Shown: positions 943-21,313 of the stretch, piece after piece
How positions within the stretch are numbered: the stretch's first letter is position 1
How the letters are laid out: every line of letters begins with the position of its first letter
Assembly (NCBI GenBank): GCA_002189035.1
Contig: NEEC01000018.1
Coordinates: 1,116,001 to 1,180,000 of the forward strand
Origin: Utricularia gibba
Taxonomy: Eukaryota > Plantae > Magnoliophyta
Reading direction: 5' to 3'
Length of the DNA stretch: 64,000 nt
Translations under genes and position numbers: made by a program
The notes under the pieces: generated by a model
Told to the model about the DNA's origin: nothing
What the model saw: only the letters and a program-made list of their open reading frames with translations
The model's database searches: none

Positions 943-2701
943 ATGGAGATCGAGGAAGATAGAGTTTTGGGGGAAGCAGCAGAACCCAAGAGCGGTTCAC
1001 TTTGTGGGTTCGATTCTCTCCACCAACTTCTGCGATCTTCCTTGTCTCCCCAGGTTTTTCAGGTGTGGTTTGAATGCTCTGTTCTGTTCGTGTGAATTGA
1101 TTTATTGTCATTTGAAGTTTCATTTTTCTTCCCTTCTCGCAAGTTTCGTTCTGTGTGTTGATTCGTTTTGGTTTGTCTTGAATTGATTTTATGGTGTTGA
1201 ATCCATTGATAACACGATATCTCTCGTGGGTATGTTGATGCTTTTGGTTCATCAGGAAGTTTCCCGATTGCTTCATGGACAGAACTGTGGAGGACAACTT
1301 GGCACGATCTCCATTCCTCAGCCTGCTAAATCTCTGTCTTTGGCGCACGATTTTGATTTACAGGTTTACATATTTGTTTGTTTCGTCGCGTTTGCACATA
1401 TTTATGTTATGTGTGACATTGTATAATGGTTGTCATAATTCTGCTGCAAATGTGATCCAGGCATTCGCTTTCAAGGCCAATGAGTCAGAAAGTAAACCTC
1501 GAATGGTGAGAGTGGGTCTTGCTCAGAATTCTATAGCTCTTCCAACAACACTGCCCATATCCGACCAGAAAAGAGGCATTTTTGAGAAATTGTCACCAAT
1601 TGTTGAAGCTGCTGGTACTTCAGGTGTAAACATATTATGTTTACAGGTAACTCAAACATGAAGAATACCTGGCTTCTTTGAGAATATATATGACCTCAAA
1701 AAATTTGGGTGCAGGAGGCGTGGATGATGCCATTTGCCTTTTGCACCCGCGAGAAGAAATGGTGCGAATTTGCAGAGGAAGTCGATGGAGAATCGACACA
1801 GTTTCTTCGGAGGTTTGCCCAGAAATACAACATGGTTATAGTGAATCCTATTCTTGAAAGAGATGTGAAACATGGGGAGGTTCTTTGGAACACTGCTGTA
1901 ATAATTGGAAATCATGGCAACATAATTGGAATACACAGGAAGGTAACATGAGAACAAGCTTGGTTTTTGCATTCAAGTGAGTAAGATGTAGTGGGATTTG
2001 CTTGCAGAATCACATTCCTAGAGTTGGGGACTTCAACGAGAGCACGTATTACATGGAAGGAAACACAGGCCACCCCGTCTTTGAGACTGCTTTTGGCAAA
2101 ATTGCTGTCAACATTTGTTACGGCAGGCACCACCCCCTGAACTGGTTAGCTTTTGGCTTGAATGGTGCAGAAATTGTCTTCAACCCTTCAGCAACAGTTG
2201 GTGAACTCAGTGAACCAATGTGGCCGATTGAGGTATATAATTTTGCACCATCATTTCTGGAGTAGTTCATTTACTCTGTCTGAACTTTCAGCAGCTCCAG
2301 CCATCAGCTTTTGAGTTCTTTTTTATTCTTTTCAGGCGCGCAACGCAGCAATAGCGAATAGCTACTTCGTCTGCTCCATCAACCGCGTGGGTACAGAAGT
2401 TTTCCCGAATCCTTTCACCTCAGGAGACGGGAAGCCACAACACACAGAGTTTGGCCACTTCTACGGCTCCAGCTACATCTCAGCTCCAGACTCTTCATGC
2501 ACCACGTCCCTCTCCCGCTGCAGAGATGGCTTGCTGATATCAGATATGGACCTCAACCTGTGCAGGCAAGTGAAGGACAAATGGGGCTTCCGCATGACCG
2601 CCCGATACGACATCTACAGCGAGCTTCTGGGTCGTTACGTAAAACCCGAATTCGAACCCCAGATCATTTCTGATCCATTCATCAGCAGAGGGTCTGCTTA
2701 G
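943..2701 (+). CDS. PYD3: Beta-ureidopropionase (nitrilase superfamily, reductive pyrimidine catabolism); 6 exons
   Basis: Exons 943-1062, 1256-1363, 1461-1646, 1715-1942, 2008-2232, 2336-2701, all GT-AG. Motifs [64 protein letters not shown] (catalytic E-K-C). Confidence 0.97.
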
Positions 2702-3570: not shown

Positions 3571-4858
3571 TCAGGGGAGGAGCCGCCCCTTCAGGAAGCC
3601 GGTGCACAGCTTCCTCAGTATCTCTCTGTCAGGCGCCTTCGCCTCCACCTTCGCCCTTACAGCGGCAGCGAAGGATTCCTGCACCAGGACAAGGAGTTAT
3701 TCGTGTTGGAAGACAATAGTAGCTGCAGCAGTGCGTACTTCGAACACTACGCCGTCGGAGAGGCGGTCGATGAGGTTCAGGAGAATGTCCTTGGTGTACT
3801 CCGGGTGGCCCTGTATCCCCATCACGTGATTCCCGTATCTGAACATCTCCACCCGGTTTGCGCCGACCACGCTAAAACCTCTGCTCGAGGGGGAAGCTCC
3901 AGTATCTGAAGACATCCCTGGAAGAGGTGATTACAGATTGGGTTTTATGGGTGGGGTGGGTAGATGGGTAACCTCGTCGTGGTGGATTTCGAAGATGTTG
4001 AGAGAGCTAGGCATGTTGATCGAAGCGAAGATCCGGGAGGGATACAGGTGAACTTCAGTGGTGCCGATGTCCCATCCTCCGCCGGCTCGGCCCACCTTTC
4101 CTCCTATGGCTCTCGCCAGTACCTGGTTTTGCAGAAACAGAGAGACAGAGCATTTCAGGGAAGGGAGGAATACAGGGGAGACAGGCCATTTAAGTTTCAG
4201 CTCAAGAGAAGAGAAGCAGTGAGCAGAGTCTGCAGTTGGGGAACGGATTGTTTGAATATAGAACTCGTATCCATTTCAAGGTGGGCAGACAATGCTGCAC
4301 GTCAACTAATCACATGGGAAGTTTTCTCCACAGTCAGTAACTGCGCAGAGGGACCAGTTGCTTTTTGCAGTTTTGGGGATGACAATTAGGAGGTGTTGGT
4401 GAGCCGATGCCTGTTCATGACTCGAATTTGAGCATGAAAGCCGTCTAGATACAGAGGATTCATATCGAAAGCAACAGGCCCAGAGATGAGATTTGAAGGG
4501 ACGCATAAAACACCTAGAAATGGAGTAAGTAAAAAAGATAAACCTGATGGCCGAAGCATATGCCGAGAACCTTCTTCTTCACGGCGATCAGCTTCCTGAG
4601 GAGAACCAGCAGCCGGATAATCCAGGAGTCGTTTCCGAAAGCGTCACTGCAACTTCCGGTAATCACAAATCCTTCGTACGCAAGGATCTCCTCGTCCGAC
4701 GGTAACTCGCCCTTCGTCGCGGCGAAGGCGTCCCAGATTTCTTCTTCCTCCTTCAGCATTCCCGTGAAAACCCCCAAATAACCGCCGTAGAGTTTCCTTA
4801 CATAATCGGAATCCTCGGCGCAGAGCAGCACCGCGTACTTCTTGTGAGGCCCTCCCAT
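3571..4858 (-). CDS. GGP: Gamma-glutamyl peptidase / class I glutamine amidotransferase-like protein; 4 exons, one apparent 1-nt deletion in exon 3
   Basis: Exons 4858-4544, 4122-3973, 3905-3739, 3678-3571. Motifs KKYAVLLCAEDSDYV, FVITGS, LGICFGHQ (nucleophile elbow), MGIQGHPEY (His-Glu). Exon 3 is 167 nt and shifts frame at the run 3852-3854. Confidence 0.92.
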
Positions 4859-6672: not shown

Positions 6673-9600
6673 TCAAAGCTTCTGAGAAGTGGGCATTGCA
6701 AGAGAAACCCCAGCACCAGAGGGCAGATCCTTCCATTGTTGAGTCACCGTCTTGATCTGTGTGTAGAACTGAACCCCTGCTTTTCCTGCATTCATCAATC
6801 AAACACCCTCTAAGTTAAACACACAAGAAGTTGCATCATGGACATACATCAAGCTGCATTCATCAATCACCATAGAAGTTGAGGTCCCCGGCGAACGAAG
6901 CTTTCGAACCGGTGAAGGAGAAGAACGGCAGCGGCACCGGGATGGGGACGTTGATACCGACCTGAGACAGAGAACCAGAATCAGATGAAGCAGAGGGTGA
7001 CAGGAAAAAGAGTATCATGGTGGTACCTGGCCTGCTTCTATCTCATTTTGGAATTTTCTAGCAGAGACCCCGGAGGAGGTGAAGATGGCAGCACCATTGC
7101 CATATCTGTAAACAATGGGGAGATTGGTGTACGAAGCTTAACTTAATGCAGTGAGGGACGAAAGGAGGTTGAGGGTGGATACTGATTTCTGTTCACAATT
7201 CTTATGGCGTCTTCCAAGGTCTCAGCCTGGGGTGCAGAAAGCAGATACATAATCAATCATTCTCAAGAGATGCAGATATGTGAATGCCATTGCTCTTAGT
7301 GCATTATGTACCTGCAGACAGATGAGCACCGGACCGAAGATCTCCTCCTGGAGAACCAGAGTAGGACATAACACACCCATCTCAATAATAGAAATTCTAG
7401 ACAAGCTTTCTGGACTGGGACAGGTCTGGTACCTTATAACATTCCATGTCGGGTGTCACGTCTGCCAAAATCGTCGGGCCAATGAAGTTACCTTGTTCAT
7501 ATCCTGGAACCTGGACATTGACAAAATGACGGTGAATGATCAGATATTGTTATGGATATTCTACATCAGAGTTAATCAGTTTCAAACAGAATTTGTGTAC
7601 TTTGATACTTCTCCCATCAAGCAACACTCTAGCTCCATCATCAACCCCACTTTGGATCAATCTGCATATCCTTTCCTTCGCCTACAAACATCATTTCAAG
7701 GCACACAAGCAATGAGAGTTATGTGATGCAGGATTGATGAATAGTGTTAGATACTCACTTGTTTGCTGATCACAGGGCCAAGGTCAGCCTTGGGGTCGGT
7801 TCCAGCGCTCACTACAAGGGCTTTTGCACGCTCCACTAGCTTTTCTTCCCTGCCAATAATAAACCATTTCTAATATAAGAGAAATGGATGCATATAAGGG
7901 GAAACTCCATGAAGTTTGAAATAGGAATACCATGGTCTTGAGTCTCCCACAAAGATGACTGTGCTGAGTGCCATGCATCTCTGGCCAGCAGCACCAAAAC
8001 CAGCCGCCACTAAAGCATTTAATGTGGCATTCTCATTTGCATCAGGCATCACAATCCCATGGTTCTTTGCTCCCATATTTGACTAAAGGCATCATGTAGT
8101 TCAATAAAATTGTAGAAAATGGTACGACTATATGGAAAATAGGTTACATTTAAAAAATATCATAACGAAGATTCTGATACACTAACCTGAACACGTTTTC
8201 CACTAGCTGAAGCTCTTGAATATATATGCATCCCAGCCTTGGGGTTAAACACAAATATAAGCCATTGTCCTGGGCCAAAAAAAAGAATAATGTGATAGGT
8301 AACTTACTGTATTTGAACCAACAAATGATACAGCACGAATATCCTCATCATCACATATGGCATTAACAATATCCTGCAAGATAGGTGCAATAAATCTTCT
8401 AGCCATTTAGATAGCACGCATTGAGTGCCATGAAAAATAGATGTTTCATTTCAAAAATAAAAAGAAAAAATGCGCTGGAGATTTTAAGGGATAGCCATTA
8501 GTATACATGAGTGCCATGAATAATATTCAAGACTCCATCAGGCAGCCCAGCTTCCTTTGCCAGTTCGGCAAGAATCATTGAGGCCCCTGAAATCAAAAGG
8601 GAATACAAGAACCTCATAAAAGTTGCATGAGACAGTTGTGCCAAAGATTGAATTTTAGCTGTTTTGATTCTGAGTTACAGCGTCAAACCAAGGCACCTGG
8701 GTCCTTTTCAGATGGCTTCAGAACAAATGTGTTTCCACAGGTAACTGCCACCGGAAACATCTGCCAAAAGGCATAGCGAAGAAAACAAAATTATTGGAAG
8801 GCCGGTTAACCAAAAAACAAAATAAAGTGAGCAGAGGACATGGAGGTGCAGAATGGCGCTTATGAACAGCAAATATAGTTGCAAACGTACCCATAGTGGA
8901 ATCATTGCAGGGAAGTTAAAGGGGCAGATTCCAGCGCAAACACCAAGTGGCTCTCTAATACTGAAGGTATCTATTCCATTCGACACATTTGTTGCATATT
9001 CTCCCATTTGTAGGGTAGCCATTCCACATGCATGTTCAACAACCTCTGAAGACGATTAAGCAATGGACTCAGCAGGCATTCACATGGGTACCATTCAATT
9101 AAAGAGAGAAAAAGTGAGCGAGACTGACCTAGGCCTCGGAAAACATCACCTTGAGCATCCTTTAATGTTTTGCCTTGTTCTGTCGTAATACTCAATGCCA
9201 GCTTATCCTAATATAATGATTTCTATACTGGATCAGCAGCACTCCAATGATTGCACAGTACATAGTTTAAAGAAAATACAAGAGGAAAACCGTATTTTTG
9301 CGTATAAGATCTTGCAACTTCAGCATGACTCTCTGCCTGGTTGTCACTGGTGTATTTCTCCATGAAGGAAAGACCTCCTTTGCAGCAGCAACAGCAGACT
9401 TGAATTCCTCCTTGGTGGTCAGTGGAACTTGTGCAACAACGTCTTGTGTAGCCTGTCATAACAACATGTGCGTACAGTAAATACAGATCAGCAATGAAGA
9501 GCCAGCAACTCTCAAGCACACCAGTCTCGATTCATTCATTCACTTACGGGATTTATGACATCAATAGTTTCGGATGAAAGAGAATCCACCAAGCTGCCCC

Positions 9601-10150
9601 CAATTACATTTGGAAGCCTCTGTGCCAACACATTCAAATTGATAAGCAAGCAATCAGATAAAAACCCTACATTCTTAAGTCAGAACCCTGTGTAGACATT
9701 TGCAAATACGATTCGAAAACCGTACATCTTTTAAACTTGAAAAACGTCATGCAATTGCGATAATCTCAAAATTTGATCATCATCATTTCCCAGAAGAAAG
9801 TGAATGAAGAAAAAACAATCGAACAACCCCCCAAAAAACCCAACTCACCAGAGACCTGCCATTACTCCAAGATGCCTCAGCAGAACTCGAAAAACTAGAA
9901 TTAGAAGTTCCCAGAAGCCAAGGTCGCAGCTTCCTAGTACCACTCACTGCATAAACAACAACGAGAGAAAAAAAAAAAAAGATCATCCCCCCTAATATCA
10001 AAATCAAGGATCAATCCCAATCCAGTCATAATTCATACAAACTTAATCCATGCACAATTCCATACAAACTCAATAATTTTTTATTATCACATCCGCCGGA
10101 AGAAGTTGTAAGTAGATTGATACACCTCTGCGGGCAGCGAAGTGCAGCAT
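6673..10150 (-). CDS. ALDH6B2: Methylmalonate-semialdehyde dehydrogenase [acylating], mitochondrial (canonical ALDH6); intact multi-exon gene
   Basis: Transit-peptide-like start [21 protein letters not shown]. Motifs [107 protein letters not shown]. The exons traced are GT-AG and in frame; TGA at 6673-6675. Confidence 0.97.
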
Positions 10151-10871
10151 TTCTGAATTCCCGTCGGCGTGAAACCGCAGTGCTGTTGATGGGAAGTCGA
10201 ATCTCCTCACTCAGCGCTGAGCTGCTGACGCGGATCCTCTTTCAAACATAATCATCACCATCCTGCATAAATATATACACAATATATTTATTCTGCATCT
10301 GTCAGTCGTCGTCTTGAGCAATTTGAGTTGGATTTGCCTGCCTTCCAACTCATTTCTGAATAAGCAAATTCTTTCCTTTTCTCACCCCTCCTACCTTATT
10401 TCAAATGCATTATCCACAAAAAATAATTACTTTTTGAACAGAAAAAAATTTTAAAATATTTTTTACTTTTTGAAAAGTAGAAACTATTTATTTACAGAAT
10501 GCATTTATTCCTACCTTTATCGAATTTTCGTAATTTTTTTCTACTTCCATTTTTATTTTTTTAAATTTTTTTTAAACATTGTTTCCACTCTTAAAATGTC
10601 CTAATTTTCAAATAATCTATAATTAAAATTATACTTTAAATTTTAGAACTAAGATCAATTAAAATGTAAATAAATACTTTTCTAAATATTTATAGTTAAA
10701 GGAAATTTTTTTTAATACATCCAATGGATTCGCATTTTGTAATAAATTAATGAATAAATAAGAAAATCATATTAATAACTAATACATATCTTAATAATAA
10801 ATATATAGTAATAAATATCAATTCTCATTAAACAAAAACAAAGTAATATTTGGCGTTCTATCAAATGTGCC

Positions 10872-13800
10872 CTAAAAGTGCAAAGTCCAGTGTGTTCCAT
10901 CCAAAGGTGTGATCGCTTGTGGCATTCCATCGCTGGCATGAATTCTCGCCTCTTCGACCAGAGATTCTCCATGGCTGCTGCTTGGAAAATCCTTGGGATG
11001 CAAAGCGGGCAGCTGCAGCCCCATGCCCTCGTGACTCGAAAGCTCATGGTGCAGTGGGAGAGATACTGAAACTCCTTCCCCATGGGAGAAGTCTCTCAGA
11101 TGCAGTCCCAGGGAGACATCGTTTACCGGGAAGTCGATGCCGGGTATTGCCTGCGCCTCTCCGCCGCCGCTGCTGCTCGGCCTTATGTCTGGTGTAAAGG
11201 CGGAGGAACACACCTTGTTGCTGGAGAAGTCCTTCAGCTGCATGGTTACTGTTTTCTTCCTGGTGTAGAAGCCAAGTCCGGCGTCACCTGCGTTTGATGA
11301 GGATCGTGAAGGGACTGGAAAGGGAATGAGGATTATGAGGAGCCAGAGAGTGTGTGGTGTACCGTGGAAATTGATGTCTCCGGTGAACGAAGGTTTGGAG
11401 CCGGTGAATGTAAAGACAGGTAACGGGGCTGGAATAGCTACATTCACACCGACCTGAATTCGAGGAACCAGATACTGAAATCCAATGAGTGGAGGAAGGA
11501 AGGAAGGCGAGCTGGAGAACATACCTGTCCAGAAAGGACCTGGTTCTGGAACTTCCTTGCAGCGGAGAGAGAAGAAGTGAAAATGGAAGCTCCATTTCCA
11601 TGTCTGAAGAAAGAACATTCATCCATGAAGTATATGATCATCTTTTTTTTTTTTTACAGAAAAAAAAAAACATCTTTAGTACTTATTTCTATTGATTATG
11701 CTTATTGCCTCATCCAAGCTTCCAGCCTGCGTATGAACGAAGAGTTAACTGAGCATAATCAAGCTGTTAACATGCATTAGGCAGCGGCTATGTATGCAGA
11801 CCTGCATGCAGAGCACAACTGGGCCCAAAATCTCTTCCTGCATGCAAAAAGGAATACACATGCTGTATTCGACGTTCCATGAGAAAAGTAGACCTGAGAG
11901 ACTACTGCATACCTTATAGCAATCCATGCTTTCTGTTACATCAGTCAATATTGTTGGACCAATGAAGTTTCCCAATTCGTACTTGGGAACCTATGGATTC
12001 CAAATTGACAACCAAAAGTTGAAGTGATAAATAACTACATGTATTCTCTGCAGATCTAGTGAATTTAGATGAAAGGAGGGGAAAAAGTTTAAGGGTGTAC
12101 CACAACATTTCTCCCGTCAAGAATCAATCTGGCACCACTGTCGACAAATCTTCGGATCACACTTGATATACGTTCCTTAACCTGAAAAAAGCTAGCATAT
12201 AACATCAAAGAAAAGTTCTTGATGGAAAAATGGAGCCAAGCAGCGCAGAGTGCATCTTGATTGTCGAGCAAAAAGTTAAAACAATTTAGAGTACCTGCCG
12301 ACTAATAACTGGACCAATGTCGGCACCTGGTTCTGTCCCAGCATCTACTTTAAGCGCCATGGCATGCTCTACAATCTTATCTTCCCTGAGGGTATTTGAT
12401 AACAATAAAACTCCTAGAACGTATATCCAAATAACCAAAGCAGCCAGCAAGTCTACCATTGGCAGTATTTTTAGCATAAATAAATTGGTAAAAATATCCT
12501 TGAAAATAGGTAATTCATACCAAGACTTTGAGCCTCCAACAAAAATAATAGTGCTAATTGCTGTACACTTTTGAACTGCAGAGCCAAATCCTGCAGACAC
12601 GAGATCATGCAAAGTAGATTCCATGTTTGCATCTGGCATGACTACTGCATGGCTTTTGGCACCAACGTTAGCCTGGACATCAAGGTGACCGATTAATGAA
12701 TTCAAGTATCCAAACCATTTCATGTAACAAAATGCATAGAACAAACAGGCATAGGGCTTCCACCTGAGGATGCTTCCTGTCGGCAGAAGACCTAGCATGC
12801 ATATACATTCCAGGCTGGAGACGAGAATGTGTTTAGTTACCTTTCACTTTCTTGTAAAAGGTGCAAAGTGAGTTCGTGGGGAAATTATGAGTGGAAACAG
12901 CAGTATATATAAAAGAGTAAGAAGCATGAAATCTAAACTGAACACCACAAAACTGTTCTCCCAAAAGACACATACCCCCACCTCAATCATTTATTGATTC
13001 AATGTGGAATCATTGCTGCATTTCATGGGCCATTTTATCTAAGAATTGGGTATTATAAGAAGCATATGTGATCTATGATTTGAAAATCATTTGCATCATT
13101 GTGCAAGCAAATTCAGTTTTCATGTGTATTATCTGTGGAATACCAAGTGCAAGAAAAAAAACAAAAATAATCTTACCGCATCTGAACCAATATAGCATAC
13201 ATTTTGGATTTCATCATCACAGATCACATCAATGATGTCCTGCAGGTTTACAACATGCGATGATGTCACTTCAATTGAAAGTAACTACCACAATGATACA
13301 ACGTTCACTGTAATCAGGAAGTGGGAAATGCAACTTATAAGCATTCTTGATGAGAAGTGAAAAAAGAAAAGGAAAAGGGAGGACATAATAGGCCCCGCTC
13401 ACATTTGTGCCATGAACAACATTTAAGACTCCATTAGGCAAACCAGCCTCCATTGCTAATTCAGCAAGATGCATGCAAGCCCCTGTGAAGAATGAGGCGA
13501 ATGTTTTTATACCGAAAGAGGAAACACATGGCAAAGGCCAATCAGGCAACTATAGTACAGAAACTGGGCGATATTTTCGAAAAGAGAACATCCACTAGCA
13601 ACTAAAAGAAGATGAATATGACGTCAGTAATTTTTACTTGATCACCTGGCGCTTTTTCGGAGGGCTTTACAATGAAGGTATTTCCACATGTAACAGCAAT
13701 TGGAAACATCTGTGACGGATGAATGAGTCATCAAAAAGCACAGAAAATGAATGAGAACTGAATAATATTCCTCTTCTCTTATATCGTTGGTTAGTTAATC

Positions 13801-15682
13801 AGAAGATCGCTTGATATTTCAAATAAAATTTTATTTAGCGAAAAACAAGACAAGCTTTTAATGCCATTTCACAATCACTTCATTAGCACAGGTAGAGGCA
13901 AATGATTTTAATTATTAGTCATGCAGCACTTAGAACAAACCAAAAGGGGAATCATGGCTGGACAGTTGAAGGAGCAAATTCCAGCACAAACACCAAGGGG
14001 TTCATGGATGCAATAAGTATCAATTCCAATCTTTGTACTCATTGAGAACTCCATAGTTTGCAAATTTGTCAATCTACATGCCTGCTCAACAAGCTCTGCC
14101 AGATAAGGAAAAGTGTTTATTGCCATCTCACAGGACCCAATTGGAGAGAATGACCAGACTTTACGAACATAATAAATTTATTCCTTTGTCATTTCATAAG
14201 TAAAATCAAACAAAAAAATGCAAATAACAACTAAACTGGATGCAACCTGGGCTCACCAATCCCATGATTGACTTCCACAAAGGCATCCTTCAATGTCTTT
14301 CCCTGCTCCGCAGTAATAATGCTGGCAAGCTTTTCCTGGAAAAAGTTTTTGACAAATCATAGTTGAATTTCCAATTCAAGTTGCATCATATATAACTAAA
14401 GCTTACAGTATCTCTGCAAATTAGCTCCTGAAGCTTGAACATGATTCGCTGGCGACTTTTAATGGGGTATTTTTCCATGATGAAGATGCTCTTTTTGCAG
14501 CAAATAGTGCAGCCTTAAGTTCTTCATCCGTTGATAAAGGAACTTTTCCAATAACTTGTTGAGTAGCCTAAATTAGATTAATCAAAATTGAGAGTCTACG
14601 AGAAGTGCAACTTGATAAAACATAACTATTTAATGCACTCACGGGGTTTAATATATCAACAAGCATCGATGAGTTTGAATCAATAAACCGGCCACCAATG
14701 AGATTTGGGACCCTCTGCATGACATGAAGTAAAAGTTTCGACATACTTCATCATGATCAAATAGAATTCAGCTTACGGAAAAGAGCCTCAAACCATCATC
14801 ATGGATGTGCAAGAAGGATAAGATGTGCAATCACTATTTCATGTGGAATTCGAAATATAGGTGCACAAATATTACCGGGGGTAACATTTCTTCCATGATG
14901 GCTCAGCTGACGTTGAAGGCTCAGACTGTCCATCCACAGGTGTAGTGGTTCTCAATGCCATCAGTCTTCTGACTGTAATAAAAAGCATAATAAGGCAAAT
15001 AATTCATAGCTACTGTCATATGCACAATCAAAAAATGAAAAGCTTAACTGTTGCACATTAGAGTGGTAAAAAATTTTCAATAAATGAAGCCAGTCAGTTG
15101 TTTCCGGAAACACAAAGCACCCAAGGAGTAGGAAAACAGCAAACACAGACCAGTCAGATTCCCTTGACGGAGCTTTGCTTTGACATTATAAACATGTTTC
15201 GGTGTGGATAAAAGCTCAGGATTTGTTTGCCTCAGTCTTTTAAGTATCTGGCGGGGTTTCAGTCCAGCATCTGTCATTTCTTTTATCAGCAAGACTTCTT
15301 TTTCACTAAATCGGCGGGCAGAAGGATGTTCAGATATGTCTCTCATCGGTTCATGATTGTGTGAACCATTCTTGACAGTTAGCAGCCACAGACCATCCTC
15401 CTTCTTACCCACAAGCTCAAATGGACAGTTAGTTAGCCGAGAACCCGATTTCCTTTTCCGAGAGTTTTCACTGGAGGACCCATCAGCTGACTTCCTCCTA
15501 TCCCGATAAACGCCTCCTCTGTCACAACCAAGTACTACAACCTTTTCCTTCTTAGACTGTTTAATTGTGACAACATATCCCTGGGAAATGGCGAACTCCC
15601 CAACATGCTGAATAAGCTCCTCACGATCAATAAAACTACCAGGAGGCGGTGGAAGCATAAGTGGAGTTTCATCCAACTCCAT
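10872..15682 (-). CDS. FAR1/MULE-type DNA-binding domain fused to a divergent ALDH6 (MMSDH-like) domain with a repetitive C-terminal extension; two apparent 1-nt deletions
   Basis: Exon 1 from ATG 15682 encodes [20 protein letters not shown]...LGCDRGG...TNCPF...HNH..., splices in phase 1 to exon 14972-14876, then an ALDH6 exon series matching the neighbouring gene ([52 protein letters not shown]). Stop TAG at 10872. Confidence 0.85.
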
Positions 15683-15843
15683 GTATGAGGTACTGTTTAT
15701 ACCAACAGCAAACTTTTTGAAATGATCATGTCATCGTCGCACCATATGCCCTGAGAAGGCAAGGACACGAGCAAAAGATAACAACCTTTTCCATCATCGC
15801 ACCATATTCCCAGACCGTAAATCACTTGAAAAATCCTCATCAA

Positions 15844-15866
15844 ACACACACACACACACACACACG
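15844..15866. repeat. (CA)n microsatellite upstream of the FAR1-ALDH6 gene
   Basis: Run of alternating ac/ca read directly. Confidence 0.85.
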
Positions 15867-16750
15867 TAAAGAACCTAAAATCCCGTAAAATTTCACTTTT
15901 TCATCAATCCTCCTAATCCCACATCCAGCCAAATGGAACTAAACCATATAACCGGAAACCACAAAGCTTTCATTTAAAGTTCATCCTTCGATCTAGTGCA
16001 CTCACAAAAATACCAGATCATTCAAACAACATCAAATGGAACCACTCAAGAGTGCGAATTTCAGTTAAAGAAGACGTTCTCACCCGCGGAAATCCAGGAT
16101 GTATGGAAATACACAGCTACGTAACGGTCGAATTTCCCCTTTGATATATCTTTCTATTTTAATTCCCTTTTCCTTCTGAAATAATAAGAGGAGCGTGGAA
16201 GAAACATTGGAGATCTGGATGTAGCGATAACCCTAATTCCGGTAGGTCCCACCTTCGGGGCTTCCCTCAACGGTCCAAAACCCCGGGGCCCCGCCCCCGA
16301 CCACGCGGCACACGATCCTTAATTTTTTATATTATATATGTTAATAAAATAATTTAATTAATAATATATTTAAACACATTTAAAATTAAAAATATTTTGA
16401 ATAAATAATTAAAAAGTAAATTAAAATTTAATTGATTAAAAAATTTTATGTAAAAAAATTAAAAAATATGAAAAATTATGTAGATGTTCAAATAATGTGT
16501 ATATTAAAATAGTATTTGATAATATATTATAAAAAATTTATATTTAAATTTATACATAAATCGTTGTTTGATTAATTATTAACTATATTATTCACACATT
16601 CATTTTTAAACATATGTATGATATACACGTATAATTAAAAAAAACTAATTATATCTATTTTAAATCATGTTTTCTCATTTATACATTTTTATATTGTTAT
16701 ATCTCAAAATTTTATTTAATATTAAACACATAATTTGTTATATAACTTAC

Positions 16751-16939: not shown

Positions 16940-17616
16940 TCATTTTACAGGGGTAGCCATTTCTGTGGAGATCAAAACGTTACGGAGGACCTCCAAACTG
17001 CAGCTACTGGGCAATGTCTCATCTCCCACACCATCATCCAGTGACACCCTTTTCACCTCCCGCCGGCAGCGGCAAGATTCGAGCTCTTTCTCTAACCACT
17101 TTTTCTCCGATTCGTGCTTCAAGACTAACCATTGCAGTGATTGAATCACTTGCTGATCATGAATCTGCTTCTCCTCCGCAAGTCTTCTGTAATGGCTCGA
17201 TTCCATTTCAATCACGCTCTTGGAGCTCTGAATCCGGAGAATCATCGCCAGTGCTTCCTCCGCAGCGGTGGCTGAAAAAGCTCTCTCCTTTTCCAGTTCC
17301 GACAGGGCATGTTTGGCCTTACGACGCTCGATTTTGATCAGTTTTCGCAATTTTGAAACCTCTGATCCGCAATCTGAATCATACCCTGGTTTCGATTCTC
17401 CATTCGAACCCGATGCATGTTCCCGATACTTCGATTCCGTCGGTGCCCCCCATTTCCGGAATCCCCCATTACGGAATAGCATCTTGAATCCGACGCCAAG
17501 CAGCAAAACTACGGGATGACAAGCCCCGAAACCTTGTCGATATTCGCCATCGAAGAACACTTGCATCTCTGTTCAAAAACTTGGGAGAAACGCTTCAGGA
17601 ATTCAATGCAGTTCAT
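16940..17616 (-). CDS. FLOURY1-like / GTD-binding (zein-binding, DUF593) coiled-coil protein, intronless; N-terminus probably shifted by a 1-nt deficit
   Basis: Motif SEVSKLRKLIKIERRKAKHALSELEKERAFSATAAEEALAMILRIQSSKSVIEMESSHYRRLAEEK. Hydrophobic N-terminal stretch VVLLLGVGFKMLF. An upstream frame MNCIEFLKRFSQ (ATG 17616) joins it if the run at 17524-17527 is one base longer. Confidence 0.8.
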
Positions 17617-18062: not shown

Positions 18063-20834
18063 CTAATACACGGGGCAGCCATCAACCTGTATACCCTTGG
18101 CAGTCGGACAAGTAGACAAAGGGCAGTGATCGCCGGCGGTTCCCCACCAGTCGATCGAAACCTGCTCCATCCCCAAAGAGAAGTAGACGAGCACGGCCAT
18201 GAAAGCAACTCCGGCATCCATAGCTGCTGACAAGATGTAGTTGTATCTCTGCCACCATTGTTTCCGGTACCGGAACACGAAGCAGTTGAAGATTGTTCCG
18301 ACGATGATCCAGGCGTTGTAGTTCATTGGGGTAGCGGGAGGCATCGCACCAGTTGCTCCAAGAAGAACTGGAAGGTTGATGAGTGGAATCCATGACTGTT
18401 TAGGGAATGCCTTGTGCAGCAGCCATACCAAGAAGGGGCCTATTGCACCTCCCAGGAAGAACCAGTTCATGGAGCCGTAATTCCCAAGTGGACCGAAGAT
18501 TCTCCTCGGTCCGACTAAGCCCCATATGACTGATGCATCGAAGAACACTCTGTCACTGGGACATGTCCATGGACTGTTTGGAGAAAGAAGAGCAGGGTCG
18601 CATATGTTTTTGATTGTGGTAAGCAGCCACCACGCCACTGCAATGTTGATAGTTCCTGCTATGATTGTTCCCATGGCCTGGAGGAGCATTGTGAGTTCAA
18701 TATTCGATTAAAATGAAGGTGGGAACTGTGATTGAACGCCTGAATATACCTGAACAATGAACATGGATCTGGGAGGGATTTTCATGTAGTGCCCAAGCTT
18801 GAAATCACTAAGGAAGGAGACTGCCTGCGCCATACTCATGTAGCCATACACTTTGAAGCATACATTGGCAATTGGTCTTCCTGGGTAGATGATTCCCATC
18901 ACATACTCTGTTACTACATTTAAACCTGGGGTCTGCAGGAAAAGCATTTCGCTAATGTAACAAAAAAAATGAAGGATAATGAGAGCTCAGATGCTGCTGA
19001 TCATAGAGATTACCTGGTTTGTTGTTGCTGTGATGATGCTGATCGGAAGCGTGAAGATAAAAGCGAGAAGGCAAGCGAAGACGAGTCCCCACCATGGCAT
19101 CTGAACTTCTTTCTTCAATACAATGCATAATACTAAGGAAGCTGCAAAGGTTACTGATAACAATACAAGAAACCACCACAAAGGTATGTCCTCATATTTG
19201 CGCATAAGTCTGGTATGAATGTCATCCTTTCCCTGATATGAAGCTCGAAACTTTTCATAAATTTCTCTGTGACAGGAATTCAAGAGTCCACTATTTAGTC
19301 TGTGACCAAATATAGCACAAGACTTGAGAACTCAACTAAATTTTGTTAAAATATGAAGCCCAGAAGGCAGCACATATAGCATCAACACTTGCACATTACA
19401 GTTTCTTCATTCAAATGATTGTGAAAATAACCAAAGGAAGCGGCACAAAACATTCCCAAAGACGAAGGAGGGATTTAGTACCTTCCGTAGAAGAATCCCA
19501 CATGTACTAAAGTAGCAGCAATGGCTGCAAAACCAAACCCGTAAGTCAAAGCAAAGAACATGCTGAGGTTAATCCTCCCTTGCTGCTCATAAGCTGGTAT
19601 ATCAAGGTCAAAATTTTTGTTCACGATAAGAGAAATATCATACGTCTGGCCCTGAGAAGTGAACAGATCTGACGAAAAGATGGGGAACTTGCGGGCACCA
19701 AACAAATCAAATTTCCAATACGCGATAGGGAGGACTAAATAGATAACCAGAAGATAGCCTGCAAAGATGTTCATAATCGCGAAGAAGGGCGTCATCAGAG
19801 GGCTTCCCAGATACGAAGAAACGGCGCTCCAATCCAACGTTAGAGCGCCGAATCCAAGGCCCGTCATTCCAGATCCGAGCTGGTTCGCAGTCACTGAATT
19901 CGTGAACGCCCAGCAAACCCATGATATGCTCGTAATCGTCGGAAATAGATACCCCGGAACCACGTACCACGAGAAGCTGCAGATCAATGCGATTACGAAG
20001 AACTTCCCTCTTGAAAACCGTCGTTCCTCTTTCTCGTGCAGCGCGCTGCAAAGAAATCAATATTCCCCGTAAAAATAGAATCTTTCCTACAAAAACTAAA
20101 GAAATATGGCATTCACTGCTTTCACATGGAAATTACCGAAAGAGAGAAACTTGGATGAGGGTTCCAGGCCACCACATATGAGCCGGTTCAACAACATACT
20201 TCCTCATAAGCCCTGCCCATCCATATCCCAATACCTGGAAATTCTCATATTCAGTGTTATGATCCCAAAATTCATACTTCAATCAGTAACTAACTCCTGA
20301 GAGCATTACCTGAGTTGTGATAATAAGAAGCCACCCGGCTACGAAAGAGATGTTTCTGTGATACAAAGCCTTGATAATATCAACAATTCCCACAGCATAA
20401 GCAGGGCCATTTCCGAAAGCGCTTCCAGCGTTCGCGAAAATGGAGATCAAAACATGCTCCTTCATGTTAAACGGCCCAGGATTCAAACTGAATCTCCGAT
20501 CACCGCACCCGGGGATTCGAAACTTGGACCTCGGAAGCACCGCCGCCAGGAACTGGCCGATGGGTAGGACGGCGATCAGAACCGTGACCTGAGTTATGAC
20601 AAGGGGCTCCGTTCTGTATGAGAAGAACTGATTAAGGAAAGAAAGAAGCCCACATGAGAGCACGCCTAATAACCACATTCGAAAAGTCCAAACAGGCACG
20701 CTTGGATCGTCCGTCGTGGGAACCGTCAGACGGACTTCTTCGATCGGGGATTCATCCTCCTCGACGACGCCGTGATACAGGCTTTTCTCCGCATCGGAAC
20801 CCATGAAGGAGAGCTCCATTTCCCCAGCCCCCAT
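18063..20834 (-). CDS. OPT: Oligopeptide transporter (OPT family, OPT4/OPT2-like)
   Basis: [56 protein letters not shown]...[43 protein letters not shown] introns, in frame, TAG at 18063. Confidence 0.97.
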
Positions 20835-21313
20835 TTCCCTCAGCGGGTACTCTGAACACGATAAACTAATAATTGCTAGTAACGTTGGCTTGTATAAGTA
20901 GCGCTGGCATGCGTTGACTTTATTTCTTCTCGTACGAATCAAAAAATTGCATTTCTAATAATAAGCAAAAAAAGGAGAACGTTCATAGCACATCCACAAA
21001 TCAGACAAAATCTTCCACTAGTAACAAAATCACAAACTTATAATCAAACTTCTTCAAATTCGACGTCTTTTCGCATCGAAAATACGAGTCATTTGCATCG
21101 AATTAGATTATTTATAGATGAGTTTGGATCATAGACACCTAATGTGAATCCTTGGCTGAGTTGATATTCTTTGCTAGGTACTGTAGCGAGTAGAAAACAA
21201 CACATATTAATTGTAATGTTGCTTGTTTGAATAAAGAGAGGGTTGAAATGAGATTAATTGGGAGGTGTACATTTATGGTAATTATTGATGCCAATTGGGC
21301 CGCGTGTTATAAT

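What the first reader, a model, noticed from the sequence alone, without database searches (positions are those of the whole stretch)
10872..15682. FAR1/transposase-derived DNA-binding domain fused to an ALDH6 paralog, in tandem with the canonical enzyme: candidate metabolite-sensing transcription factor
Seen: exon 1 encodes a roughly 180-aa domain with FAR1/WRKY-GCM1-like metal ligands (GCDRGG...CPF...HNH), basic NLS-like stretches (RDRRK, RKRKSG) and the helical region that follows this domain in MULE transposases. It is spliced to a full-length ALDH6 with all splice sites intact and no nonsense codons. There is no mitochondrial presequence. The gene ends about 720 bp upstream of the canonical ALDH6B2 on the same strand. 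Established: FAR1/FHY3 are transcription factors domesticated from MULE transposases, and ALDH6 binds NAD and CoA. Inference: a nuclear enzyme-TF chimera that could couple NAD, acyl-CoA or semialdehyde status to transcription, or tether acyl-CoA production to chromatin. Similar architectures may already sit in databases under an MMSDH label, but I know of no functional description.
Basis: partly seen in the sequence, partly recalled or inferred. Interest (0 to 1): 0.85.

Follow-up and report, generated by a model that had tools for sequence, protein, structure and literature searches.

The report
Conserved FAR1 DNA-binding–ALDH6 fusion gene
This plant gene really does splice a transposon-derived DNA-binding domain onto a copy of a mitochondrial aldehyde dehydrogenase, and it belongs to an old, strongly conserved family found across core eudicots that databases label as the ordinary enzyme and that no paper I could find describes.

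Summary
Spliced RNA contigs from four runs in two studies join the FAR1-type exon (15750-15151, ATG 15682) in frame to 18 ALDH6 exons. All introns are GT-AG. The two "homopolymer frameshifts" are 1-base assembly deficits that the RNA restores. The product is 807 aa: a zinc finger, a helical region, a linker, an ALDH6 domain and a roughly 118-aa tail.

The gene is not unique to this genome. More than 100 orthologues (F1, 700-860 aa) and a second paralogue family (F2, about 1050 aa) occur across rosids, asterids, Caryophyllales, Santalales, Saxifragales and Dilleniales. Nearly all are labelled "methylmalonate-semialdehyde dehydrogenase, mitochondrial". F1 usually sits in tandem with the canonical gene, as it does here.

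The DNA-binding module is as constrained as the canonical enzyme (dN/dS 0.00-0.08; four zinc ligands invariant in 48/48). The fused ALDH domain evolves faster (dN/dS 0.13-0.14). It has repeatedly lost catalytic or substrate residues that are invariant in canonical ALDH6. This window's copy has Arg124 changed to His and Arg301 changed to Lys.

The best reading is a domesticated DNA-binding factor in which the ALDH6 moiety is a ligand-binding or oligomerising module, not an obligate MMSDH. Nuclear localisation, DNA binding and sensing are untested. The scan had already noted the lost arginines and the exon swap on this same stretch; I tested both and they hold.

The parts
16084..16155 (-). Non-coding first exon (5'UTR). 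The upstream end is approximate: it is where the RNA contigs stop, not a mapped transcription start.
   Evidence: the X1 loose end at 15751 matches 16085-16099. The X2/X3 1898-nt contig has 72 nt beyond 15749, and there is depth in bin 16016-16212. The donor GT is at 16083-16082 (sequence).
15751..16083 (-). 5'UTR intron (333 nt, GT..AG)
   Evidence: zero depth in 15819-16015, and the acceptor AG is at 15752-15751.
15151..15750 (-). First coding exon: 68 nt of 5'UTR, ATG at 15682, then 177 codons plus 1 base (phase-1 donor). It encodes the whole transposase-derived module.
   Evidence: contigs 15151-15749 joined to 14972.
15347..15643 (-). FAR1/AFT-type WRKY-GCM1 zinc finger (residues about 14-112). 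Zinc ligand codons are C53 15526-15524, C86 15427-15425, H108 15361-15359 and H110 15355-15353. A basic, NLS-like disordered loop (RDRRK...RKRKSGSR) spans residues 58-83.
   Evidence: Pfam FAR1/AFT hits. AF2 model with pLDDT 80.6 and the pattern strand, helix, four strands. Best PDB hit is AFT2-DNA, 4lmg. Ligands are invariant in 48/48 fused proteins and in the 38-sequence alignment A1.
15152..15337 (-). Helical region (residues 116-177, four helices). This is the most conserved part of the protein.
   Evidence: helices 120-172; it aligns with Arabidopsis FRS10/11/5 residues about 46-246; 74-90% identity between rosids and asterids; dN/dS 0.00-0.03.
14973..15150 (-). Coding intron 1 (178 nt). 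It is retained in a minor RNA species, which would give a 201-aa protein with only the DNA-binding module (stop at 15077).
   Evidence: joint 14972/15151, and X1 record 7 spans 14944-15180 unspliced; analogous intron-tailed ORFs P0002 and P0005-P0009 in other species.
14876..14972 (-). Linker exon (residues 178-210). It is homologous to exon 2 of the canonical gene (the end of the transit peptide) and is entered at the same phase-1 acceptor. It contains C-run 14877-14881, which is one base short in the assembly.
   Evidence: SAExSW homology with 9946-9849. dN/dS 0.26-0.31.
11363..14714 (-). Sixteen ALDH6 exons (residues 211-670). Exon ranges: 14714-14643, 14567-14407, 14335-14257, 14095-13941, 13709-13646, 13482-13403, 13239-13177, 12814-12764, 12672-12521, 12385-12295, 12181-12101, 11990-11913, 11837-11802, 11726-11683, 11603-11525, 11453-11363. 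C-run 14464-14467 is one base short in the assembly. Key codons: His312 (Arg124 position) 14266-14264, Asn358 13967-13965, Lys487 (Arg301 position) 12570-12568, Cys488 12567-12565.
   Evidence: RNA joints, GT-AG; colinear with the canonical copy; Aldedh and PDB MMSDH matches.
10872..11287 (-). Last coding exon. It holds the end of the ALDH fold and then a tail of about 118 aa that the canonical enzyme lacks. The tail ends in ...[10 protein letters not shown], a terminus conserved in lamiids. The stop codon is at 10874-10872.
10806..10871 (-). 3'UTR, up to the end of the RNA contigs
   Evidence: contigs end at 10806, and depth is 0 in 10500-10696.
6673..10150 (-). Canonical ALDH6B2 (MMSDH) gene in tandem downstream. 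It has 19 coding exons and a 538-aa product with a transit-peptide-like N-terminus, and all catalytic residues are intact.

Best explanation
The gene is the F1 member of an ancient core-eudicot family.

**Origin (inferred from gene structure and trees).** An ALDH6 (MMSDH) gene duplicated in tandem. In the upstream copy, the tiny first coding exon (8 codons plus 1 base, the start of the mitochondrial transit peptide) was replaced at the same phase-1 intron. The replacement exon carries the N-terminal DNA-binding module of a MULE/FAR1-type transposase: a WRKY-GCM1 C2H2 zinc finger and a four-helix region, without the MULE catalytic core or the SWIM finger.

**Shown.**
- The fused mRNA exists and is in frame.
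- The DNA-binding module is conserved as strongly as the canonical housekeeping enzyme.
- The fused ALDH6 domain keeps its fold and its NAD-contact residues Lys192 and Glu195.
- That domain has relaxed, repeatedly lost catalytic or substrate residues.

**Inferred mechanism.** Without an N-terminal presequence and with a conserved basic RKRK loop, the protein is nuclear or cytosolic rather than mitochondrial. The zinc finger and helices bind DNA. The ALDH6 body supplies dimer/tetramer assembly and a nucleotide or acyl-CoA-type ligand pocket that could modulate DNA binding. MMSDH turnover is not its conserved function. In this species the enzyme cannot bind the substrate carboxylate in the canonical way (His312, Lys487), although Cys488 and Asn358 remain.
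For: - **Fused transcript.** Spliced RNA contigs in 4 runs from 2 studies; both frameshifts are restored in the RNA. Full-length fused mRNA contigs occur in other species (L003, L004).
- **Exon swap.** It uses the same phase-1 acceptor, and the following exon is homologous to canonical exon 2.
- **Distribution.** More than 100 F1 proteins and a second family, F2. The set includes Sesamum XP_011087969.1 and proteins from Acer, Theobroma, Populus, Glycine, Coffea, Helianthus, Daucus, Camellia, Chenopodium and Dillenia.
- **Tandem synteny.** It is conserved in Sesamum L001, in adjacent locus tags and in merged gene models with two ALDH domains.
- **Trees.** F1 is a clade that mirrors the species tree (SH-aLRT 90-91) and F2 has support 100. 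The N-terminal modules of F1 and F2 form one clade (95) nested among MULE transposases. An AU test does not reject a joint F1+F2 clade for the ALDH domain (p = 0.47).
- **Selection.** dN/dS is 0.06-0.08 for the zinc finger, 0.00-0.03 for the helices, 0.13-0.14 for the fused ALDH domain and 0.05 for the canonical ALDH.
- **Residues.** Zinc ligands are 48/48 invariant. Canonical catalytic residues are 36/36 invariant. In the F1 clade (45 sampled), Asn169 is N27/D11/E4/T2/S1, with Asp or Glu in every rosid. Arg301 is R28/K17 and Arg124 is R33/H6/C5. Cys302 is lost in Sesamum and Gossypium F1 and in 9/29 F2 proteins. Lys192 and Glu195 are invariant in F1.
- **Fold.** AF2 model with pLDDT 80.6. The best PDB match is the AFT2-DNA complex. 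The best Swiss-Prot models are FRS10/11/5, FAR1, FHY3 and AFT1/2.
Against: - Localisation, DNA binding and ligand binding were not and could not be tested here.
- Pfam FAR1 and AFT scores for the window protein are below the gathering thresholds.
- Most asterid F1 proteins keep a complete catalytic set (pattern RNSRCE), so some members may still be active enzymes.
- Single-residue calls in other species rest on automatic gene models.
- dS between the compared species is near saturation (0.7-1.3), so the dN/dS values are approximate.
- The RNA runs are assembler contigs, which hide rare isoforms.
Confidence: 0.55

Rival explanations
1. Chromatin-tethered active enzyme. The fusion is still a CoA-acylating ALDH6, and the DNA-binding module recruits it to specific loci to make acetyl- or propionyl-CoA, or to consume NAD+, locally.
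For: Cys302 is kept in 43/45 F1 proteins. Lys192 and Glu195 are invariant. Most asterid F1 proteins keep Arg124, Asn169, Arg301 and Cys302. The ALDH domain is under purifying selection (dN/dS 0.13-0.14).
Against: The oxyanion-hole Asn169 is Asp or Glu in all sampled rosid F1 proteins. Cys302 is lost in Sesamum and Gossypium F1 and in 9/29 F2 proteins. This window's copy lacks both carboxylate-binding arginines. A function that needs catalysis would not tolerate these repeated losses while the DNA-binding module stays nearly invariant.
Confidence: 0.17
2. Relocated enzyme with a non-DNA-binding N-terminal domain. The captured module serves as a protein-interaction, stability or targeting domain for a cytosolic ALDH6-like enzyme with a changed substrate. 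There is no role in transcription.
For: The same module is found in gene models fused to other metabolic enzymes: DEP1 in P0010 and aspartyl-tRNA synthetase in Amborella P0157. The clade-wide, internally conserved substitutions in rosids (pattern RDPKCEF) look like a shifted rather than decayed active site.
Against: All four zinc ligands and the fold of a DNA-contacting domain are invariant. The closest solved structure is a DNA complex. The helical region shared with FRS transcription factors is the most conserved part.
Confidence: 0.2
3. Artefact or neutral chimera. A transposon fragment next to a decaying ALDH6 pseudogene is joined only by annotation, read-through or assembly error.
For: The genome sequence as assembled has two frameshifts. 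The window copy has a long branch (0.24) in the ALDH tree. This module is often merged with neighbouring genes in automatic gene models.
Against: Spliced RNA in four runs restores both frames. The 807-aa ORF is intact. Orthologues occur across more than 100 species, with dN/dS far below 1 in every domain. Intronless full-length mRNA contigs exist in other species.
Confidence: 0.02

Closest known systems
FHY3/FAR1/FRS transcription factors and the DNA-binding-domain-only FRS-related factors (FRF) of Arabidopsis: MULE-derived domesticated transposases
   Same: The N-terminal C2H2 WRKY-GCM1 zinc finger and the following helical region superpose on the models of FRS10, FRS11, FRS5, FAR1 and FHY3. 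Both originate from MULE-type transposases: relatives P0013, P0015, P0020 and P0493 carry MULE and ZSWIM RNaseH-like domains. Both show long-term purifying selection after domestication.
   Different: There is no MULE core and no SWIM finger; an ALDH6 enzyme body takes their place. Sequence identity to Arabidopsis FRS proteins is only about 20%. The module comes from a different, AFT-like MULE lineage and scores below Pfam FAR1 gathering. No FRS or FRF protein is known to me to be fused to an enzyme (my own knowledge; 0 papers hold both 'ALDH6B' and 'FAR1').
Canonical plant ALDH6B2 / MMSDH (CoA-acylating methylmalonate/malonate-semialdehyde dehydrogenase, mitochondrial)
   Same: The 18 exons downstream of the FAR1 exon are colinear with canonical exons 2-19. 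The domains are 59% identical and share the ALDH6 fold. Cys302, Asn169, Lys192 and Glu195 are present. The two genes are tandem neighbours.
   Different: The start of the transit peptide is replaced by a 177-aa DNA-binding module. Arg124 is His and Arg301 is Lys. The rate is about 3-fold higher (dN/dS 0.13-0.14 versus 0.05). There is an extra C-terminal tail of about 118 aa. Catalytic residues are not conserved across the fused clades, whereas they are invariant in 36/36 canonical sequences.
Bacterial trifunctional PutA (a ribbon-helix-helix DNA-binding domain fused to proline dehydrogenase and an ALDH-superfamily P5C dehydrogenase) and NAD(H)-sensing dehydrogenase-like co-regulators such as CtBP
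   Same: A DNA-binding or transcriptional role is combined in one polypeptide with an ALDH or dehydrogenase fold that binds a nicotinamide cofactor. This is an analogy of mechanism (my own knowledge). A PutA ALDH domain appears as a distant PDB match, 5ux5.
   Different: There is no homology in the DNA-binding part. PutA is a fully active enzyme, and its switch is driven by flavin redox state. Nothing of the kind has been shown for this protein.
Yeast Aft1/Aft2 iron-responsive activators
   Same: The best solved structural match to the zinc-finger module is AFT2 bound to DNA (4lmg, E about 1e-3). Pfam AFT hits occur in the window protein and its relatives.
   Different: These are fungal proteins with no enzyme fusion. 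The similarity is at fold level only (17-21% identity).

Membership tests
FAR1/FRS family (Pfam PF03101 plus MULE PF10551 plus SWIM PF04434 architecture) | Sequence match to the FAR1 DNA-binding domain model above Pfam's gathering score | tested here: not met
   FAR1 22.7 bits against a cut-off of 28.1, and AFT 20.2 against 21.6. Homologues found with the window exon do pass: P0015 FAR1 41.8, P0012 30.2, P0003 AFT 39.8.
FAR1/FRS family (Pfam PF03101 plus MULE PF10551 plus SWIM PF04434 architecture) | C2H2 zinc ligands on a WRKY-GCM1-type beta sheet | tested here: met
   C53, C86, H108 and H110 are invariant in A1 and in 48/48 fused proteins. The AF2 fold matches AFT2-DNA, WRKY18 and the FRS/FAR1/FHY3 models.
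FAR1/FRS family (Pfam PF03101 plus MULE PF10551 plus SWIM PF04434 architecture) | Central MULE transposase core domain | tested here: not met
   There is no MULE hit in the window ORFs or in orthologues P0001, P0004 and P0011. The ALDH domain follows the helical region after a 33-aa linker.
FAR1/FRS family (Pfam PF03101 plus MULE PF10551 plus SWIM PF04434 architecture) | C-terminal SWIM zinc finger | tested here: not met
   None was found in the Pfam scans. The C-terminus is an ALDH6 tail.
FAR1/FRS family (Pfam PF03101 plus MULE PF10551 plus SWIM PF04434 architecture) | Sequence-specific DNA binding and nuclear localisation | not testable with these tools
   Only an NLS-like basic loop (RDRRK...RKRK, residues 58-83; RKRK conserved in A1) and the fold are available.
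ALDH6 / CoA-acylating MMSDH | Aldedh fold and phylogenetic placement within plant ALDH6 | tested here: met
   Exon-level Aldedh hits. Orthologue P0001 scores 426 bits over model positions 1-461. The best PDB matches are MMSDH chains 9izu and 8xxq. Trees place it in ALDH6.
ALDH6 / CoA-acylating MMSDH | Catalytic Cys302 and oxyanion-hole Asn169 | tested here: met
   Cys488 and Asn358 are present in the window protein. They are not conserved across the fused clades.
ALDH6 / CoA-acylating MMSDH | Arg124 and Arg301, which hold the substrate carboxylate. Their role is as I recall it from Talfournier et al. 2011, J Biol Chem 286:21971, which I could not read here. | tested here: not met
   His312 and Lys487 in the window (shared with Genlisea P0205). 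Both positions are Arg in 36/36 canonical sequences and in the PDB MMSDH alignment ('GQRCMA').
ALDH6 / CoA-acylating MMSDH | N-terminal mitochondrial transit peptide | tested here: not met
   The exon encoding its start is replaced. The N-terminus is acidic (MELDETPL). The remnant exon has gained Asp and Glu residues. The internal Met182 is not conserved (Sesamum has Lys). No targeting predictor was available.
ALDH6 / CoA-acylating MMSDH | MMSDH enzymatic activity | not testable with these tools
   This needs a recombinant enzyme assay.

The most novel reading that the evidence does not exclude
Core eudicots carry a conserved, so far undescribed class of transcription factor. In it, an ALDH6-derived pseudoenzyme or near-pseudoenzyme acts as an NAD(H)/CoA-thioester-sensing and tetramerising domain that gates DNA binding by a domesticated MULE zinc finger. 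It would be a eukaryotic counterpart of PutA- or CtBP-type metabolic regulators. Its target pathway is unknown; branched-chain amino-acid, propionate and beta-alanine catabolism (the canonical enzyme's pathway) is an untested guess. A shorter isoform from intron retention, carrying only the DNA-binding module, would act as a competitor.
Probability: 0.22. Interest if true: 0.85.

Novelty: new variant of a known kind. Interest (0 to 1): 0.66.

Why it matters
Domesticated transposase DNA-binding domains such as FHY3/FAR1 are major plant regulators. This family would be the first case I know of in which such a domain is permanently welded to a metabolic enzyme fold and kept under strong selection since at least the rosid-asterid common ancestor.

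Its members are currently named "MMSDH, mitochondrial". That label probably mis-states both their location and their activity, and it inflates counts of ALDH6 enzymes in crop genomes.

Published ALDH inventories list only ALDH6B2 in Arabidopsis (PMC9714362) and a single canonical family-6 gene in rice (PMC2902511). That absence would explain why the family has escaped genetics.

It offers a clean test bed with many natural variants, some with and some without the catalytic Cys or Asn. It can be used to study how an enzyme turns into a regulatory module, and whether plants couple acyl-CoA or NAD status to transcription.

On the practical side, the two homopolymer deficits show that this assembly produces false frameshifts.

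Tried and rejected
- **Another FAR1/MULE copy or flanking repeat in the window.** A tblastn/blastn self-search for a recent transposon insertion found none.
- **Tail from read-through of a canonical 3'UTR.** I found no convincing DNA homology. The tail looks more like reiterations of the canonical C-terminal GVSLAMPTS motif, judged by eye only.
- **Pseudogene reading.** Rejected by the RNA-restored frames and by dN/dS.
- **Alternative mitochondrial isoform from Met182.** The Met is not conserved in orthologues, and the following peptide is acidic.
- **Peroxisomal PTS1.** The C-termini (…WTLHF in lamiids, …MPSS in rosids) are not SKL-like.
- **Literature.** Eight full-text searches found no description of a FAR1-ALDH6 fusion. 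The two plant papers holding both terms mention them separately.
- **First codon mapping.** The tblastn-based mapping missed short exons. I replaced it with exact-match mapping.
- **Talfournier et al. 2011.** The paper could not be retrieved, so the role of Arg124 and Arg301 rests on my recollection.
- **Monocots, early-diverging eudicots and Brassicales.** I could not determine whether they carry the fusion.

Full report
**1. What is in the window**

The minus strand of 6.6-16.2 kb carries two ALDH6 (MMSDH-type) genes in tandem. A tblastx comparison of the two regions shows the same series of ALDH exons twice.

The upstream copy is preceded by ORF 15682..15077. Its product has weak Pfam hits to the FAR1 DNA-binding domain (22.7 bits) and to the AFT domain (20.2 bits), both just below gathering. 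The exon fragments further down hit Aldedh. The catalytic exon aligns to solved mammalian MMSDH structures such as 9izu and 8xxq.

**2. Is the chimera transcribed and in frame?**

Nine RNA runs of the organism hold 5-43% of the sampled words of the stretch. I laid four of them (two studies) on 10500-16400.

- Their contigs skip 15 listed segments, plus three more seen in the contig pieces. Every one is bounded by CT..AC on the plus strand, which is GT..AG on the minus strand.
- An 1898-nt contig in X2 and X3 and a 1005-nt contig in X4 run directly from 15749-15151 into 14972-14877 and on into the ALDH exons.
- A loose end at 15751 matches 16085-16099. This defines an extra non-coding 5' exon and a 333-nt 5'UTR intron.
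- Depth is zero between the gene's 3' end (10806) and the canonical gene, so the two genes are separate transcripts.

- All four runs carry an extra base next to the C-run 14464-14467.
- All four runs carry an extra base in the C-run 14877-14881.
- Runs X2-X4 are otherwise identical to the assembly. These are therefore homopolymer deficits of the assembly.

With the two bases added, the CDS is 2424 nt and encodes 807 aa without an internal stop. The corrected exon is 162 nt, exactly the length of its canonical counterpart.

One X1 contig (14944-15180) retains coding intron 1. That form would end at 15077 as a 201-aa protein made of the DNA-binding module alone.

**3. Origin of the architecture**

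The canonical copy encodes 538 aa, with ATG at 10150 and stop at 6673. Its exons 2-19 are colinear with the 18 exons that follow the FAR1 exon, and every border is canonical.

- Canonical exon 1 encodes only MLHFAARR plus one base.
- Canonical exon 2 (9946-9849) begins at a phase-1 acceptor. It is homologous to the fusion gene's linker exon 14972-14876 through the shared motif SAExSW.
- The FAR1 exon therefore replaced the first transit-peptide exon at the same phase-1 intron.

**4. It is a family, not a one-off**

An exhaustive HMMER search with the 177-aa exon product found 1911 proteins. The best hit was an 801-aa protein that is 92% identical over residues 1-177. Pfam shows Aldedh behind the module in P0001, P0004 and P0011, while other hits carry MULE and ZSWIM RNaseH-like transposase domains.

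P0001 is Sesamum indicum XP_011087969.1, named [quoted passage not shown]. P0004 belongs to Acer/Dipteronia and P0011 to quinoa.

**Family F1.** A search with P0001 listed 120 proteins, nearly all with the module at the N-terminus. They come from:
- asterids: Lamiales, Solanales, Gentianales, Asterales, Apiales, Dipsacales, Ericales and Cornales;
- Santalales;
- many rosid orders.

The module is 76-95% identical to the window's. The closest is Genlisea aurea, at 94-97% in the module. This suggests the window comes from Lentibulariaceae or a near relative.

**Family F2.** A search with the module of P0004 revealed a second family of about 1020-1100 aa with a long repetitive tail. It occurs in rosids, asterids, Caryophyllales, Saxifragales, Dilleniales and Santalales.

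**Independent RNA evidence.** Assemblies from other species contain intronless full-length fused ORFs: L003 (2867 nt, ORF 153-2555) and L004 (2493 nt, ORF 172-2301).

**Synteny.**
- Sesamum has the same gene order as the window: Zein-binding gene, fused gene, canonical gene.
- Consecutive locus tags pair the fused and canonical genes in Theobroma, Camellia, Buddleja, Rubroshorea and Diplodiscus.
- Merged gene models of Rhododendron, Corchorus and Turnera (P0158-P0160) carry the module followed by a fused-type and then a canonical-type ALDH domain, showing the tandem pair there too.

**Absences reported in the literature.** The Arabidopsis ALDH list contains only ALDH6B2 in family 6 (PMC9714362). 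Rice has a single 534-aa family-6 gene (PMC2902511).

**5. Phylogeny**

- On the ALDH domain, F1 is a clade (SH-aLRT 90-91) whose branching mirrors the species tree. F2 is a clade with support 100.
- An AU test does not reject a joint F1+F2 clade (delta lnL 1.55, p = 0.47).
- On the N-terminal module, F1 and F2 form one supported clade (95) with short branches. This clade is nested among long-branched MULE transposase relatives.
- The simplest history is one capture event, followed by duplication into F1 and F2 before rosids and asterids diverged.
- The window copy falls within the Lamiales F1 proteins but has a long terminal branch of 0.24.

**6. Selection and residues**

NG86 dN/dS values between the window, Sesamum and Genlisea (dS is 0.7-1.3, so the values are approximate):

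| Region | dN/dS |
|---|---|
| Zinc finger | 0.06-0.08 |
| Helical region | 0.00-0.03 |
| Linker | 0.26-0.31 |
| Fused ALDH domain | 0.13-0.14 |
| Canonical ALDH domain | 0.05 |

Identity between rosid and asterid sequences:

| Region | Identity |
|---|---|
| Zinc finger | 70-83% |
| Helical region | 74-90% |
| Fused ALDH domain | 68-78% |
| Canonical ALDH domain | 85-88% |

The four zinc ligands are invariant in 48/48 fused proteins. The canonical clade is invariant (36/36) at Arg124, Asn169, Lys192, Glu195, the GSxxxG motif, Arg301, Cys302, Glu399 and Phe401.

In the F1 clade (45 sampled) the same positions vary:

| Position | Residues in F1 |
|---|---|
| Asn169 | N27/D11/E4/T2/S1 (Asp or Glu in every sampled rosid) |
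| Arg301 | R28/K17 |
| Arg124 | R33/H6/C5 |
| Cys302 | Lost in Sesamum (Phe) and Gossypium (Arg) |

In F2, Cys302 is replaced in 9/29 proteins. Lys192 and Glu195, which contact NAD, stay invariant in F1.

The window protein has His312, Asn358, Lys487 and Cys488, a pattern it shares with Genlisea.

**7. Structure of the module**

An AlphaFold2 model of residues 1-177, built with a 38-sequence alignment, has a mean pLDDT of 80.6. Only the basic loop at 58-83 is disordered.

- The fold is one strand, one helix and four strands, followed by four helices.
- The only PDB hit below E = 1e-3 is AFT2 bound to DNA (4lmg). WRKY and GCM domains follow.
- Among Swiss-Prot models the best matches are the N-terminal 170-190 residues of Arabidopsis FRS10, FRS11 and FRS5 (E 4e-8 to 7e-7, TM 0.53-0.59). 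These cover both the finger and the helices. FAR1, FHY3, AFT1/2 and RBF1 come next.

**8. Interpretation**

*Shown:* a real, expressed, in-frame fusion gene. It belongs to an ancient, widely retained family. The DNA-binding module is under housekeeping-level constraint, and the ALDH6 domain has conserved its fold but not its catalytic residues.

*Inferred:*
- Loss of the N-terminal presequence and the conserved RKRK loop argue for a non-mitochondrial, probably nuclear, location.
- The zinc finger and helices bind DNA.
- The ALDH6 body contributes oligomerisation and a nucleotide or acyl-CoA-type pocket.
- Catalysis is dispensable in many lineages.
- In this species, canonical binding of (methyl)malonate semialdehyde is unlikely.

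The "metabolite-sensing transcription factor" idea remains an attractive but untested version of this reading. I put it at about 0.2-0.25. A chromatin-tethered active enzyme (about 0.17) and a relocated enzyme with a non-DNA-binding N-domain (about 0.2) are the live rivals. An artefact is essentially excluded.

**9. Novelty**

The architecture is visible in public protein sets under MMSDH or "uncharacterized" names. Eight full-text searches found no description of it. No paper holds both "ALDH6B" and "FAR1".

It is best classed as a new variant of a known kind: a domesticated MULE/FAR1-type DNA-binding protein whose transposase core is replaced by an enzyme-derived domain.

Noticed in passing
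window 14464-14467 and 14877-14881: The assembly is one base short in two C/G homopolymers compared with RNA contigs of four runs. Other apparent frameshifts in this genome may be the same artefact.
   Followed up: yes
P0396-P0505; no copy in this window: A second fused paralogue family, F2, of about 1020-1100 aa: module, ALDH6 and a long tail with reiterated ...SERMYMPxTSH...-like units. It is widespread in core eudicots. Its catalytic Cys is replaced in 9 of 29 sampled members.
   Followed up: partly
P0010 (XP_048327329.2), P0008, P0009, P0042; P0017/P0157 (Amborella XP_006848204.2): The same DNA-binding module is fused in gene models to other metabolic enzymes: methylthioribulose-1-phosphate dehydratase/enolase-phosphatase, and aspartyl-tRNA synthetase. 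The first group is the sister clade of the ALDH6 fusions. These may be recurrent enzyme capture or annotation merges.
   Followed up: partly
window 14973-15150 (intron 1); P0002, P0005-P0009: Intron-1-retaining RNAs encode proteins of 200-264 aa made of the DNA-binding module alone. They end in intron-derived tails right after '...RQGNLT/S-G'. They are seen here (X1 contig 14944-15180) and in RNA assemblies of several other species. They may be a conserved short isoform or simply unspliced precursor.
   Followed up: partly
P0189 (Sesamum alatum), P0191 (Dorcoceras), P0193: These 690-707-aa gene models join the FAR1 exon directly to a canonical-type ALDH6B2 body (82-89% identical to the window's canonical copy). 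This is possible in frame because both genes share the phase-1 acceptor. They may be annotation artefacts or real read-through splicing.
   Followed up: no
window 10872-11240: The C-terminal tail looks like reiterations of the canonical C-terminal 'GVSLAMPTS' motif ([17 protein letters not shown]). It ends in a terminus conserved in lamiids, ...LDG(S/T)(Q/H)WTL(H/N)F. Its function is unknown.
   Followed up: partly
window 1275-2701 (+), about 3600-4858 (-): A CN_hydrolase gene that looks like beta-ureidopropionase (beta-alanine synthase) (Pfam 57.6 bits) and a weak class-I glutamine amidotransferase hit lie just downstream of the canonical ALDH6B2. This puts two possible beta-alanine/malonate-semialdehyde pathway genes next to each other. 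The enzyme identity is my reading of the ORFs beyond the Pfam family.
   Followed up: partly
window 16940-17566 (-), 18063-20942 (-); L001: A Zein-binding (GTD-binding) domain gene and an OPT oligopeptide transporter gene lie upstream. The order Zein-binding, fused ALDH6, canonical ALDH6 is shared with Sesamum indicum chromosome CM002363.1.
   Followed up: yes
window 10872-15682 versus P0205: The closest relative of the fusion protein is from Genlisea aurea (94-97% in the module, with the same His/Lys substitutions). Genes here are densely packed with very short introns (71-362 nt). The window probably comes from Lentibulariaceae or a close relative.
   Followed up: partly
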